Below are positions 16,255 to 36,597 of a stretch of DNA of 64,000 nt, one piece after another. The stretch covers positions 124,001 through 188,000 of the IMG/VR virus record IMGVR_UViG_3300018424_000006; one strand, 5' to 3'. The notes below the pieces were generated by a model, which saw only the letters and a program-made list of their open reading frames with translations, did not search any database and was not told the origin of the DNA. Position 1 is the first letter of the stretch. Each line of letters begins with the position of its first letter. Both the position numbers and the translations under genes were made by a program.

Positions 16255-17700
16255 TTACATTTGGAATTGTCCAGCCAAGTGGATTGCAGGCTGAAATGTA
16301 GAGTCAATTGCTAGACGTAAGTCAGATGCAACGTTGTTTAGTTGGTCTTGGCTAACGCCTACTACCGGAGTAGTGATTGAGTTGCAGAAAGCTGGAGCAC
16401 TAAATACGCACCATTCTTTACCGTCGATACTTAGATTAATATCAACGTTACCCATCAAGTTACACGACACGTTGATAGTAAACAGCGTGCAATTTGGAAC
16501 AACACAGGCGGCCATGATTTCATCAATCAATACTCGCTCAAGTGCCATCATTTTCATTGGGTTAATTGGAACTTCTGAAAACATGGAAATCGGATCGCTC
16601 GTAGGAGCCAGGGCCGGAGAATTTGTCATGTTTTGATTACTCATCTCGAAGCTAAAGCCGGAGATAAAGAAGTCGCCAAGAATGGTTGGTACTAAGTGAG
16701 TCAGGGTATAAGCAATCTTAGTTTCGATTGTACTCATGCCCCAGTCCATTGAATGCTGAGCCATATCAACGATTTCACCATTACCCAAGAATTGGATTGC
16801 ATAGGTGCCATCGTTGTAGTCTGGCCAAAGCTGCTGAACGTCACCAAGCGTTACTGTACGAGTTGTAGCGTATCCACAACGACGATCCATTTCAGTTAAG
16901 AACTGGGAGTTGGTGTGAGTCGCTTCACGTAAGTTTTCTGCTGCGTGATTACAAGTAAAGTCTTCTGAGCCATAACCGCAGTCGTCGTCATTCATAGCCA
17001 TGTTATAGCTGTTCAACACCCCACTCAGGAATTGACCAGAACGAACATTGCCTGTTTTAGACATACAAACTTTGTTATTCAAAGAAGTACGAGAATCCAC
17101 CACATTGGCATCATACATTGTCAAAGAACCCTGACCCATGGTGAGTAGAGTATCCTGGGGACGCATACCTACGCCATCTACTTGGCCATGTCCTGCCAAA
17201 GCAATTGGATTCAATACTTGTGATAACTTACGATCACTAGTCGCATGGTTTTCAATGCCCATTGCGGTCTGGGTCGCCATGATTTCATAAGGCATGAAAC
17301 CATTAAACCAGATGAACATGCCCGGATCTAGAAATCCGTTATGGGAGGCGTCTACTTTATCCGTAAAGCCAGTTAGCATTTCATATGCCTTACCAGTTGG
17401 ACGCGAAACTTCAATAAGCATGTAAACTGCAAACCGGCGTTCTTGCCAACCATTAGCAATGTCCAGTTGTCCGGAGGATTGTACTCTAGGCGTGAATAAT
17501 TTATTCGCTACGCCGTTTAAAGCAGGAGCAGATAAACTACCAGAGCCGTCCATTACACGGGAACTAATATTTTGCAATTCTAGCTCGATCTCTGAATTGA
17601 ACGTAGTGTCAAAAGGACGGTAGTGCTGTTGTCCTTGAGCAGCCTGCTCAACAAAGAACATACGCTTTAGTGTTAACGTAGGCTGGTAAAAGTGATTCAT
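16255..17700 (-). CDS. picA: Phage-nucleus protein import factor PicA/Imp1 (gp69-like)
   Basis: IANGWQERRF, RPQD and APAFC motifs; position right after the gp68-like gene; start ATG 17700 after AGGA. Confidence 0.7.
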   Translation of the reverse strand: MNHFYQPTLTLKRMFFVEQAAQGQQHYRPFDTTFNSEIELELQNISSRVMDGSGSLSAPALNGVANKLFTPRVQSSGQLDIANGWQERRFAVYMLIEVSRPTGKAYEMLTGFTDKVDASHNGFLDPGMFIWFNGFMPYEIMATQTAMGIENHATSDRKLSQVLNPIALAGHGQVDGVGMRPQDTLLTMGQGSLTMYDANVVDSRTSLNNKVCMSKTGNVRSGQFLSGVLNSYNMAMNDDDCGYGSEDFTCNHAAENLREATHTNSQFLTEMDRRCGYATTRTVTLGDVQQLWPDYNDGTYAIQFLGNGEIVDMAQHSMDWGMSTIETKIAYTLTHLVPTILGDFFISGFSFEMSNQNMTNSPALAPTSDPISMFSEVPINPMKMMALERVLIDEIMAACVVPNCTLFTINVSCNLMGNVDINLSIDGKEWCVFSAPAFCNSITTPVVGVSQDQLNNVASDLRLAIDSTFQPAIHLAGQFQM

Positions 17701-17721
17701 AATGGGTTTTTCCTGTTTCAA

Positions 17722-29463: not shown

Positions 29464-31659
29464 TTACCCGAAATGTTTGTCAAAGTCTATTATAAGATTG
29501 TCTTTGGCTGTCTGCATATCAATATCATGATATGCGAAACGAGTCTTGTGTTTATTCTTATAATAGATACCTAGACATTCCAGCATGTAGTAGAACGATT
29601 CAGTTAGGTCTGTTAACAGTTTACCAATATCCACTGCTTCCCAGATCTCATCCGGAATAGTATTGTTTTCTAGATGCTCTTGACTTACTAACAGCATAGT
29701 GAAGTTAGTTCGTCCAGATTTCTCTAGCCAGCCACGCATTCTACCAGCTACAGCGGGATCAATTCTATCCAGCCATGCCGCCAAAGCAGTCTTGTTTGGT
29801 AAGTCTACAGGAATCTTTTTGCATTCCACAGTTGGGTCCGGCATCGCTCCGTATTTAGGCGCAAATACTTCCTGCCATAGATCATAGTAGACTAAGATAC
29901 TCGATTCAGGATTCTTATAAGCACTCGCATCTTTAATACGAACGTTATAAAGAGATTCCGAATTACCATTCCGCAAGTCTTCTTGGATTTTGTGTTCCAA
30001 ATAGGCTGGTACAGATATAGCTTGTGCTGGAGTAATCTTTTCACCTTTCTTAAAAGTCTCTACGATAGCGGTTACGTAATCATTAAAGATTTCGATAATC
30101 CAACGAGGTACTTTACTAGACTTAAGGGCTACCCCTTTTGTCTCGAGTTCTTCTTCCGGATATACGTTTCCTTCACAAGCTGAGATGGTTGCTATGTAAT
30201 GTTTAGAACGGTTAGTCACACCCATTACCGGCATAGCAAATTCTGGCTTCATCTTCAGAGTAAACATATGTTCTTCTGGAGTGCCGATGTTTGCTGACAT
30301 CTTCGCTAGGAAATGTGTTACCAACTGAGAGTTTAAGTAAGTCATTAACTCACGTGCACAGTCAGCTTGGAAGTCAAACTTAAGTTCGCCTAAATACCAC
30401 TCAATAATACTTTGCGTTGTAAACAAGGTACTATCTGTATCGGATGCTATTACGCATTCACGGACAGAAGTTGGGAAGTGGTGAATAGAACTTGGAGTCA
30501 AGTCAGTACACATAAATGCTTCAAAGAAAAGATTGTATCTTCCTGTGATCGCTTCTGTGATATATTTAACTCGATAAGCAAAGCGCTTATAGACCTTCGG
30601 ATCTTCCTCAACCAAATCTCCAATGGATCTACCTGCTAAATCCTGAGCAGACAAAGAAGCTACTAACGAATCAATATAGTCGTCAGCTCCTTTAATCCAT
30701 TTCTTAGCCTCATCTATTTCCATCTCTGGGAAGTCTTCAAAACCAAACAAAGTTAGTTCGTCAAACATCTTACGGACAAAGTCTGGATTAATATCCATCC
30801 AAGTCTTTAAGTCTGAAACGCCTATTACAACCATCAGTTGTACTGGATTAAGTTTACGCAAGAAAGCTTCTAACTTATTCCACTCTGGAGTACTCATCCA
30901 ATAGCGATCACAAGCATTCTTAAAACGCTCTAGGACGTATTCAATTGAAGGTAGTTTGAAACCATAAGTCTCAATAGCTTTCTTCACTAACTCCATATCC
31001 ACTAACTGAATAGCTGCTACTGCATTCTCCAGTGCAATGCTAGGCATATAGTAGTGACGGTTACCCATCATAAAACGTTCTGTGGAGCTATTAGAATTGG
31101 TTGTAGCTACACGACACGTAGAAGTTAATGAAGTATGTGCACTTCCGGCATAGTTTGGATTGTGAGGGCTACAGTGAGCCCCAGAGAACGAGTTATTCAA
31201 TATCTTGATATTAACCTGTTCTTTATCCCAGTAGCCTGCCATGTCTTCGTCGCCGGCCATCTTAGCTTCGAACTTTTTATTCTTTACTTTCTTACGGCGA
31301 CTTAGACCCTCATCAATAAAGTCCCCTTGATAGCAACGTTCTTTTTTTGGATCTTCATAGGCAATTAAACTTGGGCTTAGTACCAGATTCTTTTGCTGAA
31401 CCGTACGTAAGAATTCGGATAGTTTAATTTTACCTTTCTCTCTATCCGCATGCGCATGCTTGCGGAAGATAACCTTTAATTCTGGATCTTTAGGTTCCAG
31501 AGGACCGCCGGGTTTCGAAAGCTCTACTGCTTTCTGTAACGCTTCTTCATATGGAATATCTTTCATAATAGAAGCATAGCATGCTAGATGCTCACGATAG
31601 TTTCGAACAACGTTTAAGTCACGCTCATAGTCATTCGGCCCCTTTAAGAAAAGACTCAT
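29464..31659 (-). CDS. polB: Family B DNA polymerase, polymerase part of the split enzyme (gp50-like)
   Basis: Q.NIKILNNSFSG, ASDTDS, KHY and KGV.LKSS motifs; no exonuclease domain. Confidence 0.9.
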   Translation of the reverse strand: MSLFLKGPNDYERDLNVVRNYREHLACYASIMKDIPYEEALQKAVELSKPGGPLEPKDPELKVIFRKHAHADREKGKIKLSEFLRTVQQKNLVLSPSLIAYEDPKKERCYQGDFIDEGLSRRKKVKNKKFEAKMAGDEDMAGYWDKEQVNIKILNNSFSGAHCSPHNPNYAGSAHTSLTSTCRVATTNSNSSTERFMMGNRHYYMPSIALENAVAAIQLVDMELVKKAIETYGFKLPSIEYVLERFKNACDRYWMSTPEWNKLEAFLRKLNPVQLMVVIGVSDLKTWMDINPDFVRKMFDELTLFGFEDFPEMEIDEAKKWIKGADDYIDSLVASLSAQDLAGRSIGDLVEEDPKVYKRFAYRVKYITEAITGRYNLFFEAFMCTDLTPSSIHHFPTSVRECVIASDTDSTLFTTQSIIEWYLGELKFDFQADCARELMTYLNSQLVTHFLAKMSANIGTPEEHMFTLKMKPEFAMPVMGVTNRSKHYIATISACEGNVYPEEELETKGVALKSSKVPRWIIEIFNDYVTAIVETFKKGEKITPAQAISVPAYLEHKIQEDLRNGNSESLYNVRIKDASAYKNPESSILVYYDLWQEVFAPKYGAMPDPTVECKKIPVDLPNKTALAAWLDRIDPAVAGRMRGWLEKSGRTNFTMLLVSQEHLENNTIPDEIWEAVDIGKLLTDLTESFYYMLECLGIYYKNKHKTRFAYHDIDMQTAKDNLIIDFDKHFG

Positions 31660-31720
31660 AATTTAATTTCTCCACTCTCTCTAATATAGAATAAAAAAGA
31701 AATGTAAATTAGGCAGCAGA

Positions 31721-31754
31721 ATTACTCTACCTGCCCTAAGACAAGTAGAGTAAT
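31721..31754. terminator. Terminator-like hairpin
   Basis: ATTACTCTAC/GTAGAGTAAT stem. Confidence 0.6.
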
Positions 31755-31763
31755 CAAAAAAAA

Positions 31764-32174
31764 TTATTCGGACACCGAAAGTACTTCATATCCATTCAAC
31801 GTTAACAACGACTTGATACGAACATAATCCGCCTCTTTGAAGTTGTTAAGCTGAATAGTTACCAATCGATTTGAGACCGATGCTAAACTATTAGCATTGA
31901 TCCACGGAATGCCAATGTACACAATGGTAGTTGAATCCGTAGCCAATGCTAGATAGTTGTAAGAGGTAAAGTCATTACTAATTAATGCTTGGTCTTCTGC
32001 TGGGATAGAAGGCCAAATATTAGTATGATTTACCTGTGCATTTGAATCGGCTGGCAAGGCTCTAGGATTTACTACGCCTAGAACCTTACCTGTGAACGAC
32101 TGAACGCCGCCAATCAAACCGTGAGTTGTAAACTGAATTTCGTCATCAAGGATCAAGCTTGTTTGTGAGAGCAT
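31764..32174 (-). CDS. Conserved protein (gp49-like)
   Basis: H.NIWP.IP, YNYL and IGIPWI motifs; directly upstream of the polymerase. Confidence 0.65.
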   Translation of the reverse strand: MLSQTSLILDDEIQFTTHGLIGGVQSFTGKVLGVVNPRALPADSNAQVNHTNIWPSIPAEDQALISNDFTSYNYLALATDSTTIVYIGIPWINANSLASVSNRLVTIQLNNFKEADYVRIKSLLTLNGYEVLSVSE

Positions 32175-32475
32175 GAGGGATCTCCAATAGAATACTGGTT
32201 CCGCCAATTAGCTTTAGACTATCTACATCTGGCGATGTAGACAAAGAAGCTTCTTTGCGGATGTCATTTAAAATTTCCATTATAAGATCAGTCGGCTCTT
32301 CTTCAATAAGTTCACCATAAACAATGGCAACCTCAAGAAGTTCTTCTGCTTTCGCATAGAGTTGTTTCCGAACTTCCTTACAAGAAGGAGTATCCGGTAA
32401 GCTTTGATTATGAAGTAGGTTAATCAGTTTTAAAACCGCGTTTGACTGACAGAGTAGTACTACGGGCTTATCCAT
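32146..32475 (-). CDS. Hypothetical protein, paralog array member 6
   Basis: 109 aa; C-terminal LIGGTSILL. Confidence 0.6.
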   Translation of the reverse strand: MDKPVVLLCQSNAVLKLINLLHNQSLPDTPSCKEVRKQLYAKAEELLEVAIVYGELIEEEPTDLIMEILNDIRKEASLSTSPDVDSLKLIGGTSILLEIPHALTNKLDP

Positions 32476-32484
32476 GTACCTTAC

Positions 32485-32895
32485 CTATTTATAGTTGACT
32501 ATACCGAAACTGGCCGACCATTGATCGATGGTGACGAGTTCAGCTTCTAAGTATTCGATACCATCTACGTTTAAATTTTTCTCGGCGAATGAGACAAGGC
32601 GATAAAATATCTCCTTAAAGTAAACGTAGAAAGTGTCTTCTTCAACATGTCCTATTGATAGACGGATACCATTAATTATGTCATCCGAAAAAGAATGCTC
32701 TGCAACTGCGATATGTTGCAGCATATCTATAAAATTATCTTCTACGTTATCAGGCATGTAGCCACGACTAAGTAGACGCCGTTTAGCATCGATAATTATA
32801 TCTTTAATATCAATTATAAGGATCAAGGGCTGGTGTTCAGACAAGCCTGTTCGGGAGAGTACTTCTCCCTGCGGTGCTTTGAACGGGAATGGCAT
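32485..32895 (-). CDS. Hypothetical protein, paralog array member 5
   Basis: 136 aa; LIIDIKD. Confidence 0.6.
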   Translation of the reverse strand: MPFPFKAPQGEVLSRTGLSEHQPLILIIDIKDIIIDAKRRLLSRGYMPDNVEDNFIDMLQHIAVAEHSFSDDIINGIRLSIGHVEEDTFYVYFKEIFYRLVSFAEKNLNVDGIEYLEAELVTIDQWSASFGIVNYK

Positions 32896-33313
32896 TTTGC
32901 ATTGCGCCTCGATTAACGTTCTGAATGAAGTCTATTGTAAAAGACGTACCTCCTACATACTTCGCCATAATGCTTAAATTGGGGCGATGAATATGGTAAA
33001 TAGGTGGCAGCGCAGAAAACTCAGTTTGCATATACGCGCCCACATCCATTATCAAAGTATACGCATGACTTTGCTGATTGGCCAGAAGGTTGCAATCTCC
33101 GCAAATATAACTTACGTCACACTGACAAGTTTTAGGTGGTGAGTACAAGTCTAGATAGTCAGTAGAGACCATATCGTCAATGATATTTTCTAGAGTCTGG
33201 AACTGGAACACTGCTTCTATACAATGGCAAGCTAAGGTAACGTTGTCAATAGTAGCCAACTTACCCTGCAAGATTGGAACATCGATAATGAGTCGACTGG
33301 GTAGTACGTCCAT
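32837..33313 (-). CDS. Hypothetical protein, paralog array member 4, with Cys-rich insert
   Basis: Start ATG 33313 after AAGGA; LIIDVP, CQC..ICGDC, YVGGTSF. Confidence 0.6.
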   Translation of the reverse strand: MDVLPSRLIIDVPILQGKLATIDNVTLACHCIEAVFQFQTLENIIDDMVSTDYLDLYSPPKTCQCDVSYICGDCNLLANQQSHAYTLIMDVGAYMQTEFSALPPIYHIHRPNLSIMAKYVGGTSFTIDFIQNVNRGAMQNAIPVQSTAGRSTLPNRLV

Positions 33314-33323
33314 ATCTATTTCC

Positions 33324-33758
33324 TTATAGGTTTTCTTTGAGAAGAACCCCTTCGTTGGGACCAATCCATTGAAACTTAATTCTTTCCAATGGCCATCCTG
33401 CCGGAAGAAATACTAGTAAAGCTCTCAGCTTATCTTTAATCATTTCGCTGGCTAGATTAAAGGTTGACTCGGCATGATAGGTAGGCATACCTAACGTGAC
33501 GAACATGTCGAAGTTATGCGGAGTTTTCATTAACCTCTGATAGAGATCTCTGACTCCTTCCCCATAAAGAATGCAACTGACTTCTGCGTCCAAAAACCCT
33601 CGTATATCAAAGAAGCTTATTCCTAGATTCGAGTGGTTCTCAAGCGATTGTCGGATGTGTTCTTTGACATCAACAAAACTGATAACTTCTATTTCATTAT
33701 TTTCGTTTAGGATCGGTGAATATATTTCCCGTCCCGGTCGGTATTGAGTCGCTCCCAT
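33324..33758 (-). CDS. Hypothetical protein, paralog array member 3
   Basis: 144 aa; SFVDVKE, WIGPNEGVLL. Confidence 0.6.
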   Translation of the reverse strand: MGATQYRPGREIYSPILNENNEIEVISFVDVKEHIRQSLENHSNLGISFFDIRGFLDAEVSCILYGEGVRDLYQRLMKTPHNFDMFVTLGMPTYHAESTFNLASEMIKDKLRALLVFLPAGWPLERIKFQWIGPNEGVLLKENL

Positions 33759-34198
33759 TCTAAAACCCTATAATCTCCAAGTGGTTCGGCTACTACGGTA
33801 GTATTCATGCATGTAACATGAAATACCTCGAACATGTTTTCTGGGCAATAAGGTGTGACTTCCCGTAGAATGAATAGATTGATAGGGTCGTAGTAACGAA
33901 CACCGTAAACCAACTCATTAACGTCTTGGTCAGTAAACGTAATAGTACTCTTCAAGGCAAACATTCTAGAGATGATATCTCGACGTACACCATGTAGTTT
34001 GTCTCCCACATTACCGCCACCCAAATACTGGTTTAAGTCATGATGCAACGAATCTGCCACAGCAGCCGTTATTAACTCTAAACCAAATAGTTCCCAGATC
34101 TGGTGAAAGGGACTACCCTTACCATGAGACGACTCTAGAAACTCTAGAGTAGACCGCGTTATCCCCCCAATATCTATCAGGATAGTTTTATTTTGCAT
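33707..34198 (-). CDS. Hypothetical protein, paralog array member 2
   Basis: Start ATG 34198 after GGAG; ILIDIGG. Confidence 0.6.
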   Translation of the reverse strand: MQNKTILIDIGGITRSTLEFLESSHGKGSPFHQIWELFGLELITAAVADSLHHDLNQYLGGGNVGDKLHGVRRDIISRMFALKSTITFTDQDVNELVYGVRYYDPINLFILREVTPYCPENMFEVFHVTCMNTTVVAEPLGDYRVLEWERLNTDRDGKYIHRS

Positions 34199-34571
34199 AT
34201 TCTTTCTCCAAAGCTGCAAAACTGGTTCCGCCCAAATATCGAATTTCAAAGTTCTCTGGTAGGTGATGGCTAGTTGGAATACTCTCTCGTATTTCAGCAG
34301 ACATTTCCGCAAGGATCTTTCGATCTAATGCTTCCAGAGGTTCGAAATCAAAAGCGGTACTTTTTGTTCCACTTAAATCACAAACTAAATACATCCCTTC
34401 TATAACCCGTCCGATCCAGAAGACGACAATATCGATAGGCTCATTACCTAACGAGTCTACAGGATGTGCATTTGGGTTGTTTGGATTTTTAATTTCAGAT
34501 TTAACAATGGAAATAGCATCATAAAAACTTTCCGGTACTGCAAAGATAGTTCCTTTAAGTCCATTAACCAT
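34188..34571 (-). CDS. Hypothetical protein, paralog array member 1
   Basis: 127 aa; C-terminal YLGGTSF. Confidence 0.6.
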   Translation of the reverse strand: MVNGLKGTIFAVPESFYDAISIVKSEIKNPNNPNAHPVDSLGNEPIDIVVFWIGRVIEGMYLVCDLSGTKSTAFDFEPLEALDRKILAEMSAEIRESIPTSHHLPENFEIRYLGGTSFAALEKEYAK

Positions 34572-34596: not shown

Positions 34597-34628
34597 AAAA
34601 TATCGGGAGAATTAACTCCCGATATTTT
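34597..34628 (-). terminator. Terminator after PhuZ
   Basis: AAAATATCGGGAG/CTCCCGATATTTT stem with U-tract. Confidence 0.8.
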
Positions 34629-34639
34629 AAGTTTTGCCT

Positions 34640-35641
34640 TTAGAAAACGAAACCGTCTTCTTCTTCACCGGCTACTTCAGTAGTCTTAGAAGCTTCTTCT
34701 ACCAATGCAGATGCCGCACGAGTAAAGTCTGCTACTTTTTCTTTTAGCTTGGCGATACGAGGCTCACGCTGAACCGCTGTAGTCGCGAAGTGTAGAGATA
34801 GCTTTTCATCTGGCATACTGTCCAGAATCTCTTTAGGGTAGTAACCTACAGTTGAGTACAACTGGCTACCAGAGATTTGCTCAGAATCTGCATTAGGAAT
34901 AACCGATGCAGTACTGATCATCTTGCCCTTTAGAGTGTCTAGACGACTGACGTCAGACGTAATAACGACATCCACTAGTTGTGGAGGTACGCTAGTTACT
35001 TTGTTATAGCAGATGAAGTTAGCAATGTCTGCACGGTCTAGCTCAAGGTGTTGTTCACCCATCAATAGAGCCATGCGAGTTGCATCGTCAAGAACGCGAG
35101 CATCAACCTTTGTACGAGTATTGATGTTACGACTACCTTCTTCGCCATTAGTGATGTTCTCATAATAGCTAATAAGGATTGGGTTCTTGGCGGTCTTTGA
35201 AGCTAGGTTCTGAAGAGTAGCTAGAGTCTTCAAAGTGTTGTCAGTTTCTTTTGCAGAGATAGTGCTACCCACTACTAAGCAAATTGCTGGTACCTGACGA
35301 CGCGCTAGTTCTGCAGCTACTAATGGGCCAATAACAGAACCAGAACCACCAGAGGTGCTGAACAGTACAAGGTTAGTAGTACCCGGTTTGAAAGTTTTCA
35401 ACATTTCAACCACTTGGTCATATGCAGCTTGGTGAGCCACTGCACGATTCTTGCCTGCTCCAGACATACCTGCTACCACGAAGGTATTGGCATTGTCTTC
35501 TTCGGTTACGTTTGAATGGCTGGTATCCAAGAAAGTCTTTTCAACTGCTGGATAACCTACAGCGTTAGGGACAGTCAATTGCTTGGCCAAGTTAATGCCA
35601 CAACCACCACAACCGTAAATACGAAGTTTTGCTTTTTCCAT
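34640..35641 (-). CDS. phuZ: Phage tubulin PhuZ
   Basis: YGCGGCGIN, DTS.SN, G.GKNR, tubulin signature SGGSGS, LDRADI, acidic tail ending DGFVF. Confidence 0.95.
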   Translation of the reverse strand: MEKAKLRIYGCGGCGINLAKQLTVPNAVGYPAVEKTFLDTSHSNVTEEDNANTFVVAGMSGAGKNRAVAHQAAYDQVVEMLKTFKPGTTNLVLFSTSGGSGSVIGPLVAAELARRQVPAICLVVGSTISAKETDNTLKTLATLQNLASKTAKNPILISYYENITNGEEGSRNINTRTKVDARVLDDATRMALLMGEQHLELDRADIANFICYNKVTSVPPQLVDVVITSDVSRLDTLKGKMISTASVIPNADSEQISGSQLYSTVGYYPKEILDSMPDEKLSLHFATTAVQREPRIAKLKEKVADFTRAASALVEEASKTTEVAGEEEDGFVF

Positions 35642-35814: not shown

Positions 35815-36597
35815 ATGAACGCTATTGACTATGCTTTGAATAATCTTTTTCAACGTATACCTTCTGAACTAATCACTCAGGCTTTTGGTACTTCTCCTGT
35901 CTATGGTTATATTGATAATCGTAGCTTAGAGCAGCGAGTTCGTGAAACCGTAATTGATTCTTTTGTTTCTATAGACTGCAATTTAGTAGGTGGACAACAG
36001 GTAATGCTTCCGATGAGTACTTTGCCAGGCAAGCCTGTGGAAACTGGATGGATTTATGAAATACCTTTAGCCATGACTCAAGGAAGAAAGATTACTTCTG
36101 TATTGGGAGTAGAGTATTCGTCTGGCAATGGGAACCTTTCTAATCCTGATATGAATGCAATGGGTAGAAGTTTAATGGATATGGTAAACTTCGCTACAGG
36201 GCCTTCCGGAGGCGTCGCTAGCGGTAACGTCATGCTGGTGGGACCTAATACTGTTTTCGTTGGATCGAATATGGGAACCGGTAGCTTGTACCTGCGGTGC
36301 ATGATTGCGAATGATTCACAGATGGCTAATCTGAATCCACGTGCACTTCCTATCTTTGCTCAGTTATGTGAGTATGCTTGTAAAGGAATGATTTACAATG
36401 CATTACGAATTAAGCTTGGTGAAGGTTCGATTACGGGTGGTTCTTTAAATAGCTACTTGAATCAGATACTGGATGAATACTCTGATTCTTTTACGTTGTA
36501 CAATGAACTACGTGACGGTAAGTGGAAGAAGGTTTCTATTCTTGCTGATGACTTCACTCGACGTGAGTTGACTAGAATGTCATTACCTAGAAGCTAA
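35815..36597 (+). CDS. Conserved core protein (probably gp42-like)
   Basis: MNAIDYAL....RIP..LI N-terminus and T.GR.I.SV motif typical of a phiKZ-like core gene. Confidence 0.6.
   Translation: MNAIDYALNNLFQRIPSELITQAFGTSPVYGYIDNRSLEQRVRETVIDSFVSIDCNLVGGQQVMLPMSTLPGKPVETGWIYEIPLAMTQGRKITSVLGVEYSSGNGNLSNPDMNAMGRSLMDMVNFATGPSGGVASGNVMLVGPNTVFVGSNMGTGSLYLRCMIANDSQMANLNPRALPIFAQLCEYACKGMIYNALRIKLGEGSITGGSLNSYLNQILDEYSDSFTLYNELRDGKWKKVSILADDFTRRELTRMSLPRS

What the first reader, a model, noticed from the sequence alone, without database searches (positions are those of the whole stretch)
32146..34571. Six overlapping, deeply diverged paralogs between PhuZ and the DNA polymerase block
Seen in sequence: six ORFs of 109-163 aa, mostly overlapping. 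They share an N-terminal hydrophobic strand often ending in D (ILIDI, SFVDV, LIIDV, LIIDI) and a C-terminal turn (YLGGTSF, YVGGTSF, LIGGTSI, WIGPNEG). One has a CxC..CxxC insert. From memory, phiKZ genes at this position (gp47, gp48) were implicated in nuclear protein import. Inference: an expanded family of cargo-specificity adaptors, or subunits of a hetero-oligomeric ring linked to the phage nucleus.
Basis: partly seen in the sequence, partly recalled or inferred. Interest (0 to 1): 0.62.

Follow-up and report, generated by a model that had tools for sequence, protein, structure and literature searches.

The report
Fast-evolving small-gene array beside phage tubulin
Six small genes between the tubulin and DNA polymerase genes of an uncultured salt-marsh nucleus-forming jumbo phage are real and present in RNA libraries; one is a clear relative of phiKZ gp43, and models suggest this conserved slot holds one very diverged protein fold that also includes the phiKZ nuclear-import adaptors Imp2 and Imp4, though five of the six remain orphans.

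Summary
The six minus-strand ORFs (127, 163, 144, 158, 136, 109 aa) exist as described. Each has its best codon usage in its own frame, and all lie in metatranscriptome contigs. They fill a slot conserved across about 85 chimallivirus loci: PhuZ, then 2-17 small genes, then SH3DP, then DNA polymerase.

Sequence does not show six mutual paralogs.
- ORF B is the N-terminal half of the phiKZ gp43 family (profile E 2e-10, HH 96%).
- C sits where the C-terminal half lies in phages with a split gp43, but this is unproven (HH about 15%).
- A, D and F share a C-terminal h-h-G-G-T-S-h motif found nowhere else in the 220-kb genome.
- D shares a CxC...CxxC knuckle with BONAISHI-like array proteins.
- E has no link to anything.

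No ORF matches Imp2 (gp47) or Imp4 (gp48) by sequence.

Models tell more. B (pLDDT 83) and Imp4 (pLDDT 73) both have an N-terminal strand, helices and a C-terminal hairpin. Each pulls almost only chimallivirus array proteins from BFVD, and the two hit lists overlap.

A single diverged fold family, possibly cargo adaptors, is plausible. It is shown only for B and inferred for the rest.

The parts
34188..34571 (-). ORF A, 127 aa. Orphan with C-terminal YLGGTSF (34218-34238).
   Evidence: ORF, public gene call, codon frame. No Pfam or PHROG hit. tblastn against phages finds nothing at E<=1. The ESM Atlas model is poor. Motif and leave-one-out test.
33707..34198 (-). ORF B, 163 aa. N-terminal half of the phiKZ gp43 family (PHROG 14023). 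Carries DYRVLEWE (33752-33775) after the hairpin.
   Evidence: hmmsearch with cluster c1 gives E 2e-10. An HMM of full-length gp43-like proteins hits B at positions 17-168 of 325, E 2e-7. hhsearch 96%. phrog_14023 E 1e-3, and that PHROG is phiKZ gp43. AF2 model pLDDT 83. BFVD hits include the PhiPA3 039, Psa21, Noxifer and Goslar gp43 homologues.
33324..33758 (-). ORF C, 144 aa. Candidate C-terminal half of a split gp43; not proven.
   Evidence: C overlaps B by 52 nt, like the second gene in 17 loci where gp43 is split. HH to the C-half profile is only 14-15%, but the alignment is colinear. tblastn finds nothing.
32837..33313 (-). ORF D, 158 aa. Orphan with a CxC(x5)CxxC knuckle (33092-33127) and YVGGTSF (32939-32959).
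   Evidence: phmmer against 1.84 billion representatives finds only itself, plus a marginal hit to a Cys-repeat protein. The knuckle is shared only with BONAISHI ORF62 and ORF66 and with L027/L067 array proteins. HH to cluster c58 is 48%.
32485..32895 (-). ORF E, 136 aa. Orphan with an N-terminal LILIIDI run.
   Evidence: No family, profile or tblastn match.
32146..32475 (-). ORF F, 109 aa. Orphan with LIGGTSI (32191-32211). It occupies the position of phiKZ gp48, just upstream of SH3DP.
   Evidence: The ESM Atlas model is poor. tblastn gives only a chance-level hit.
31764..32174 (-). SH3DP gene (phiKZ gp49 homologue). It closes the array and precedes the polymerase.
   Evidence: PF20287 E 6e-22. 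Present in nearly all loci examined.
34597..34628 (-). Terminator-like hairpin (13-bp stem followed by a T run) between PhuZ and ORF A.
   Evidence: RNA-library contigs of one run break here; contigs of others read through.
31767..31779 (-). Terminator-like hairpin with T7 at the SH3DP stop codon.
   Evidence: Contigs of three RNA libraries end at 31769-31776.
34640..35641 (-). PhuZ tubulin; upstream anchor of the array.
29464..31659 (-). Divergent family-B DNA polymerase; downstream anchor of the array.
   Evidence: PF20286.
16255..17721 (-). Imp1/PicA homologue. Context only: the core importer that the phiKZ adaptors work with.
   Evidence: tblastn: PHIKZ069 at 25% identity, E 1e-24, 90% coverage; also PhiPA3 063.

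Best explanation
The six genes are this phage's version of a hypervariable small-gene array that every PhuZ-encoding chimallivirus examined carries between PhuZ and the SH3DP/DNA-polymerase pair.

The array appears to be built from one small alpha/beta fold specific to these phages: an N-terminal strand, a helical core of variable length, and a C-terminal beta hairpin. This fold has diverged beyond sequence recognition. Its members include phiKZ gp43, Imp2 (gp47) and Imp4 (gp48).

In this window:
- B is the N-terminal half of gp43 (shown).
- C is probably the split-off C-terminal half (inferred from position and overlap).
- A, D and F are a lineage-specific trio sharing a G-G-T-S hairpin turn (moderately supported). 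D also has a probable zinc knuckle shared with BONAISHI-like phages.
- E is unplaced.

The genes are probably transcribed from downstream of the PhuZ terminator to a terminator at the SH3DP stop codon.

Most likely role, by analogy only: small soluble proteins that each bind one cargo, phage or host, and present it to the Imp1/PicA importer encoded at 16255-17721. That would make them cargo-specific licensing adaptors, which may themselves enter the phage nucleus.
For: Shown:
- The ORFs are real and coding.
- They are present at 100% identity in four salt-marsh metatranscriptome libraries. Contig ends fall at the terminator-like hairpin by the SH3DP stop.
- The synteny holds in 85 loci.
- B belongs to the gp43 N-half.
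- gp43 occurs fused (about 305-377 aa) or split into two overlapping genes in 17 loci.
- The model of B has pLDDT 83 and elements E-H...H-E-E-H.
- The Imp4-family model has pLDDT 73 and elements E-H-H-H-E-E.
- In the BFVD search with B, 30 of 33 named hits in the top 50 come from PhuZ-encoding jumbo phages.
- At least 9 of B's top-50 BFVD hits recur in the Imp4 model's top 50.
- By length, the Noxifer hits are exactly the seven consecutive array genes gp036-gp042. These include gp041, an Imp2-family member (prob 0.92 and TM 0.46 to B), gp042 (Imp4 family) and gp040 (gp46 family).
- PhiEaH1, Psa21, 201phi2-1, PhiPA3 044 and Eowyn hits map onto array genes in the same way.
- The A/D/F motif is unique in the genome.
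- D's knuckle occurs only in arrays of the closest clade.
- An Imp1/PicA homologue is present.

From the literature: Imp2 and Imp4 are cargo-specific adaptors. No disruptive transposon insertions were found in them in phiKZ.
Against: - No sequence or profile link joins A, C, D, E or F to any array family at 50% HH probability or more, or to each other beyond short C-terminal stretches.
- No usable model exists for these five ORFs, so their fold is inferred from hydrophobic patterns only.
- Cross-family Foldseek matches are individually weak: E 0.05-1, TM 0.25-0.5.
- BFVD targets were mapped to genes by organism and length, not by accession.
- The gp43 N-half and C-half profiles are not related by HH (6%).
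- The function of gp43 itself is unknown.
- The authors describe Imp2 and Imp4 as conserved only in Pseudomonas phiKZ-like phages.
Confidence: 0.45

Rival explanations
1. The slot is a hypervariable island of unrelated, fast-evolving accessory genes. Only B (gp43) is conserved. The shared strand and turn patterns are what any small alpha/beta protein shows, and the GGTS motif in A, D and F is a local duplication remnant or chance.
For: All profile comparisons among the five orphans are negative. D is an ORFan in 1.84 billion proteins. In the nearest relative (PhuZ 41% identity) the first two array genes are unrecognisable. Short motif HMMs built from strand 1 and the hairpin do not pick out the six ORFs. 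The bare 4-mer statistic is only p about 0.013.
Against: The BFVD hit lists of two different array proteins are almost exclusively array proteins of chimalliviruses, and the lists overlap. Unrelated folds would not give that result.
Confidence: 0.25
2. The proteins form one fold family, but they work in DNA replication inside the phage nucleus, as partners of SH3DP and the divergent polymerase or as other replisome accessories. On this view they are cargo rather than adaptors.
For: The array always lies directly upstream of SH3DP and the polymerase on the same strand. It appears to share a transcript end with SH3DP. Imp2 is itself imported, and Imp4 concerns host topoisomerase TopA, a replication factor.
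Against: The only genetic data for array members (Imp2, Imp4) point to import. No DNA-binding or enzymatic fold was found.
Confidence: 0.18
3. The genes are anti-defence or host-takeover genes, evolving quickly in an arms race with the host.
For: Small size, extreme divergence, variable copy number (2-17) and lineage-specific members. A related contig carries an Acb2/Tad1-like gene next to the polymerase.
Against: No PADLOC or anti-defence family was tested or hit. The slot is fixed next to core replication genes. orf47 and orf48 carry no disruptive transposon insertions in phiKZ, which is unusual for accessory counter-defence genes.
Confidence: 0.09
4. The six proteins are subunits of one hetero-oligomeric ring at the phage nucleus.
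For: None beyond gene adjacency and overlap.
Against: Copy number ranges from 2 to 17 between phages, which does not fit a fixed-stoichiometry ring.
Confidence: 0.03

Closest known systems
phiKZ gp43 family (PHROG 14023; PhiPA3 gp039, 201phi2-1 gp75)
   Same: B aligns with the N-terminal half over its full length (HMM positions 17-168 of 325). It keeps the D-Y-R-[IV]-x-E-W-E segment after the hairpin. It sits in the same slot after PhuZ.
   Different: In this phage the gene is split. B is only the N-half, and the following overlapping gene C cannot be shown to be the C-half. C lacks the C-terminal G-D-Y-L-P...R helix of that half. The family has no known function and no Pfam model.
phiKZ Imp2 (gp47) and Imp4 (gp48), cargo-specific nuclear import adaptors
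   Same: Same gene slot: Imp4 lies directly upstream of SH3DP, as F does. Similar size. Same order of predicted elements in Imp4 and B. BFVD neighbourhoods overlap. The Imp4-family hairpin signature P-[MLI]-D-x-x-G-T loosely resembles the G-G-T-S turn of A, D and F.
   Different: No sequence or profile similarity to any of the six ORFs. Function, cargo and Imp1 binding are untested here.
Vibrio phage BONAISHI ORF62 and ORF66 and their IMG/VR relatives (clusters c56, c58)
   Same: D shares their mid-protein CxC(x4-7)CxxC knuckle. It also shares array position (4th gene) and a C-terminal hydrophobic hairpin.
   Different: Homology is only marginal (hmmsearch E 8e-4 in a small database, HH 48%). 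BONAISHI has two such genes; the window has one.
SH3DP plus divergent DNA polymerase module of jumbo phages (PF20287, PF20286)
   Same: It is the conserved downstream neighbour of the array in all loci examined.
   Different: It has a different fold and is not part of the small-protein family.

Membership tests
phiKZ gp43 family (PHROG 14023) | Significant profile match over the N-terminal domain | tested here: met
   For B: E 2e-10, E 2e-7 at HMM positions 17-168 of 325, HH 96%, phrog_14023 E 1e-3.
phiKZ gp43 family (PHROG 14023) | Conserved D-Y-R-x-x-E-W segment after the hairpin | tested here: met
   B has DYRVLEWE. D142 and R144 are the only invariant columns of the 51-sequence alignment.
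phiKZ gp43 family (PHROG 14023) | C-terminal domain present, either fused or as an overlapping downstream gene | tested here: inconclusive
   C is in the right place with a 52-nt overlap. HH is only 14-15%. C lacks the terminal GDYLP helix.
phiKZ gp43 family (PHROG 14023) | Fold match to family members | tested here: met
   The model of B hits PhiPA3 039 (E 2e-4, TMq 0.64), Psa21 305 aa (E 1e-4, TMq 0.68), and the Noxifer and Goslar homologues.
Imp2 (phiKZ gp47, PHROG 17816) | Sequence or profile similarity | tested here: not met
   No HH hit of A-F to cluster c2 above background.
Imp2 (phiKZ gp47, PHROG 17816) | Shared fold | tested here: inconclusive
   The model of B matches Noxifer gp041, an Imp2-family member identified by length (prob 0.92, TM 0.46), and the Psa21 183-aa protein (prob 0.54). 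A, C, D, E and F could not be modelled.
Imp4 (phiKZ gp48, PHROG 26533) | Sequence or profile similarity, including the P-[MLI]-D-x-x-G-T hairpin signature | tested here: not met
   No HH hit to c3 or c75. A, D and F have G-G-T-S but lack the invariant Pro.
Imp4 (phiKZ gp48, PHROG 26533) | Position directly upstream of SH3DP | tested here: met
   F occupies that position.
Cargo-specific nuclear import adaptor (functional class) | Needed for import of a specific cargo; depends on Imp1; located at or in the phage nucleus | not testable with these tools
   This needs genetics and microscopy in a cultured host. Only the presence of an Imp1/PicA homologue was shown.
BONAISHI ORF62/66-like Cys-knuckle array proteins | CxC(x4-7)CxxC in mid-protein, inside the PhuZ-polymerase array | tested here: met
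   D has it. The motif occurs 9 times in 137,000 aa of array ORFs against 4 times in 855,000 aa elsewhere.
BONAISHI ORF62/66-like Cys-knuckle array proteins | Significant profile match | tested here: inconclusive
   hmmsearch c58 to D gives E 8e-4 in an 881-sequence database. HH 48%.

The most novel reading that the evidence does not exclude
The PhuZ-to-polymerase slot is the place where nucleus-forming phages generate import adaptors. A single small fold is tandemly duplicated, split, fused and diversified so fast that sequence similarity is lost. Its members include gp43, Imp2 and Imp4. On this reading, each member licenses a different cargo through Imp1/PicA in all chimalliviruses, not only in Pseudomonas phages. 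The six proteins here would then be six adaptors with new specificities, one of them zinc-bound.
Probability: 0.2. Interest if true: 0.8.

Novelty: new variant of a known kind. Interest (0 to 1): 0.55.

Why it matters
How the protein shell of the phage nucleus chooses its cargo is an open question. Imp2 and Imp4 were reported as adaptors restricted to Pseudomonas phiKZ-like phages. If they belong to a fold family that fills a conserved slot in every chimallivirus, two things follow. Cargo selection by small, rapidly diversifying adaptors would be a general feature of these phages. And each uncharacterised gene in the slot, including phiKZ gp43-46, becomes a testable adaptor candidate. The case also shows that a syntenic array can keep its fold while losing all detectable sequence similarity, even though the core importer Imp1 keeps 25% identity.

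Tried and rejected
- Pfam and PHROG scans of A-F gave nothing except B's weak hit to phrog_14023.
- megablast of the region against phages found nothing.
- tblastn of A, C, D, E and F against 50,697 phage records found nothing; F had one chance-level hit at E 0.2.
- The word-based search of B in 5.8 billion proteins found only itself.
- phmmer of D against 1.84 billion representatives found only itself and a marginal Cys-repeat protein.
- IMG/VR with SH3DP peptides found nothing.
- The JGI metagenome scan with the polymerase alignment found no closer relative.
- The 13 contigs carrying B are 100% identical, so no dN/dS could be computed.
- The nearest PhuZ (41% identity) sits on a 4.8-kb contig whose two array genes do not match A or B.
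- hhalign and hhsearch of A-F against 255 array clusters, and all-against-all, found only B-gp43, Imp4-c3 and a few minor family merges.
- Short HMMs of strand 1 and of the hairpin had no discriminating power.
- The ESM Atlas had no feature hits for A or F, and its own models are poor.
- The ESM Atlas shape search with the model of B gave TM 0.35 or less.
- Complex prediction of B with C gave no verdict (score 0.01). It is not evidence either way.
- A programmed frameshift joining B and C was considered and set aside. The frame offset between the two halves differs among the phages with split genes, being +1 in some and +2 in others (coordinates).
- The sigma-70 promoter scan found no more sites than shuffled sequence, and it does not apply to these phages anyway.

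Procedure notes:
- Only genetic code 11 was used.
Full report
**What is there.** The window is bases 124001-188000 of a single 219,819-bp contig. It is a nucleus-forming jumbo phage. It carries PhuZ at 34640-35641(-), chimallin just below the polymerase (PF25677), and an Imp1/PicA homologue at 16255-17721(-) (25% identity to PHIKZ069, E 1e-24).

Six ORFs lie on the minus strand between PhuZ and the polymerase: A 127 aa, B 163, C 144, D 158, E 136 and F 109. A seventh gene follows, SH3DP (31764-32174, PF20287, E 6e-22). Gene calls on public copies of the phage give the same lengths. Junctions are A/B -11, B/C -52, C/D +10, D/E -59, E/F +9 and F/SH3DP -29 nt. For every ORF, codon usage trained on the phage's long genes is positive only in the ORF's own frame.

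**Expression.** Thirteen runs hold the stretch or part of it. Four salt-marsh metatranscriptome libraries hold more than half of it. Their contigs are 100% identical to the window. In three libraries a contig ends at 31769-31776, next to a terminator-like hairpin with T7 at the SH3DP stop codon (31767-31779). A much stronger hairpin (13-bp stem plus a T run, 34597-34628) lies between PhuZ and A; one run's contigs break there and others read through. Contigs cannot prove transcript ends, and DNA can contaminate RNA libraries. I therefore read this as support for transcription, not proof.

**An isolated lineage.**
- The region has no nucleotide match among 50,697 phage records.
- The best PhuZ match there is 36% identical.
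- In 5.8 billion proteins the best PhuZ is 41% identical.
- B finds only itself by word search.
- D finds only itself among 1.84 billion representatives by phmmer.
- A, C, D, E and F have no tblastn match in phages.
- All 13 public contigs that carry B are identical across the region, so selection could not be measured.

**The slot is conserved; its content is not.** I fetched five GenBank loci (RTH11, LucasX, BONAISHI, phiKZ, PhiPA3) and 80 IMG/VR loci found with a polymerase alignment. The order PhuZ, small same-strand genes, SH3DP, polymerase recurs throughout, with 2 to 17 small genes. The 875 array ORFs fall into 255 phmmer clusters. In phiKZ the slot holds gp40-48. gp47 is Imp2 (needed for Nlp1 import and itself imported through Imp1). 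gp48 is Imp4 (needed for import of host TopA) (bioRxiv 10.1101/2024.03.27.586873).

**B is gp43.** The largest non-SH3DP cluster, c1 (77 members), contains phiKZ gp43. Its HMM hits B at E 2e-10. An HMM made only from full-length members (about 305-377 aa) aligns B to positions 17-168 of 325 (E 2e-7). hhsearch gives 96%. B's weak PHROG hit is phrog_14023, which is phiKZ gp43 (E 2e-153).

In 17 loci the family is split into two overlapping genes of about 130-245 and 130-170 aa, matching the N- and C-halves. B overlaps C by 52 nt in the same way. C aligns colinearly with the C-half profile, but only at 14-15% probability, and it lacks the terminal GDYLP...R helix. I judge 'C is the gp43 C-half' at about 0.6. 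The N-half and C-half profiles are not detectably related to each other (6%).

**The other four.** No profile link at 50% or more joins A, D, E or F to any cluster.

A, D and F share the motif h-h-G-G-T-S-h starting 16-40 residues before the C-terminus. It occurs in no other ORF of the genome. Leave-one-out profiles of the C-terminal 57-64 residues recover the third member at rank 1 (E 0.007), rank 1 (E 0.06) and rank 3 among the other ORFs of the genome (445 in all). The bare shared 4-mer has p about 0.013 in shuffles. A-D similarity has p about 0.0035. That is moderate support for a lineage-specific trio.

D's CxC(x5)CxxC knuckle recurs only in array proteins of BONAISHI (ORF62, ORF66) and of IMG/VR loci L027 and L067. 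Those phages also have the closest SH3DP. The motif is roughly 14-fold enriched in arrays. E has no link at all.

**Fold level.** With a 51-sequence gp43-N alignment (A3), AlphaFold2 gives B a model with pLDDT 83 and pTM 0.77. Its elements are strand 6-9, six helices, hairpin 124-131/134-142 and helix 143-156.

A Foldseek search of BFVD with this model returns the gp43 homologues of PhiPA3 (039), Psa21, Noxifer and Goslar. It then returns many 114-190-aa proteins. Thirty of the 33 named hits in the top 50 come from PhuZ-encoding jumbo phages.

I used the second fold on the Imp4 family (26 sequences; the first row differs from phiKZ gp48 by one residue). It has pLDDT 73 and elements strand 3-10, three helices around a disordered acidic loop, and hairpin 105-112/118-125. 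Its BFVD list is again almost entirely chimallivirus small proteins. It shares at least nine entries with B's list. It also includes PhiPA3 044, the Imp2 homologue named in the paper.

Mapping hits by organism and length onto annotated arrays gives the following.
- Noxifer: the hits are exactly gp036-gp042, seven consecutive array genes. By HMM, gp036 is in the gp43 family, gp040 in the gp46 family, gp041 in the Imp2 family and gp042 in the Imp4 family.
- PhiEaH1: gp026, gp027, gp029 and gp031.
- Eowyn: gp075, a B-like second gene, and gp076, the overlapping third gene.
- Psa21: 305, 183, 129 and 126 aa, and 201phi2-1: 153 and 128 aa, fit clusters c1, c2, c4, c3 and c11, c3.

Individually the cross-family matches are weak (E 0.05-1, TM 0.25-0.5), and the gene mapping rests on length. 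Even so, the taxonomic and positional exclusivity is hard to explain unless the array is one fold family. Neither model has a solved relative.

**Reading for this window.** All six proteins begin with a run of hydrophobic residues, often capped by Asp, followed by an amphipathic stretch. All end with two hydrophobic runs around a tight turn. This is the pattern of the two models, but it is seen in sequence only. Short HMMs of these elements do not discriminate. The ESM Atlas models of A and F are poor. No alignment can be built for A, C, D, E or F. Membership of the fold family is therefore shown for B, likely for C, plausible for A, D and F, and open for E.

**Mechanism.** The best-supported analogy is with Imp2 and Imp4: small proteins that bind one cargo and are recognised by a dedicated surface of Imp1/PicA. 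Imp1 here keeps 25% identity to phiKZ while the array has lost all similarity. That fits adaptors tracking changing cargo or host proteins. It fits equally well with any fast-evolving accessory role, and the constant link to SH3DP and the polymerase keeps a replication role open.

**Novelty.** In the paper library searched, I found no description of the slot as one fold family, and none of gp43 function. The authors call Imp2 and Imp4 conserved only in Pseudomonas phages. My clusters already extend the Imp4 family to 26 distinct sequences (HH 95% between c3 and c75) and to Noxifer gp042.

**Verdict.** Paralogy of all six, and homology to gp47/48, are not shown. The only firm homology is B to gp43.

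Noticed in passing
window 34597-34628 (-): A strong terminator-like hairpin (13-bp stem, 6-nt loop, T run) lies in the 68-nt gap between PhuZ and ORF A. This suggests PhuZ and the array are separate or attenuated transcription units.
   Followed up: partly
window 31767-31779 (-) and 31660-31763: A short hairpin plus T7 sits at the SH3DP stop codon. Contigs of three independent metatranscriptome runs end within 8 nt of it. The polymerase gene 104 nt downstream may therefore have its own promoter.
   Followed up: partly
L008-L012, L016, L018, L021-L025, L027, L033, L062, L067, L001, L002 compared with phiKZ-like loci: The phiKZ gp43 family occurs either as one gene of about 305-377 aa or as two overlapping genes. 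The frame offset between the halves differs among lineages. A third form (L023, L026, L028, L031, L069, L074) has an extra N-terminal region plus the N-half only.
   Followed up: partly
window 35815-36597 (+): A DUF7484 protein (260 aa) is transcribed divergently from PhuZ. It is the phiKZ gp42 homologue and keeps this position in RTH11, LucasX, BONAISHI, L095 and L096.
   Followed up: no
window 16255-17721 (-): The Imp1/PicA homologue has 25% identity to PHIKZ069 over 90% of its length and matches 148 phage records. It is flanked by two ORFs of similar size (509 and 473 aa) with no Pfam hit.
   Followed up: partly
ENA contig of P0006 (no DNA held): A related chimallivirus contig carries an Acb2/Tad1-hairpin protein (PF24729, an anti-CBASS/Thoeris sponge family) directly downstream of its DNA polymerase. 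It also has an SNF2 helicase directly upstream of PhuZ.
   Followed up: no
whole region, 13 public contigs and 13 runs: The phage occurs in salt-marsh metagenomes and metatranscriptomes from 2018, and partly in an aquaculture and an estuary sample. There is not a single nucleotide difference across 4.1 kb, which points to a clonal population or one bloom.
   Followed up: partly
window 32078-32101 (-), SH3DP residues 25-32: SH3DP has LIGGVQSF near its N-terminus, which resembles the LIGGTSI/YLGGTSF turn of F and A. This is probably coincidence within a beta-rich SH3 fold.
   Followed up: no
L027:6860-7558: The IMG/VR relative of BONAISHI ORF62 carries two CxC...CxxC knuckles in one 232-aa protein, so the knuckle has itself been duplicated.
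   Followed up: no
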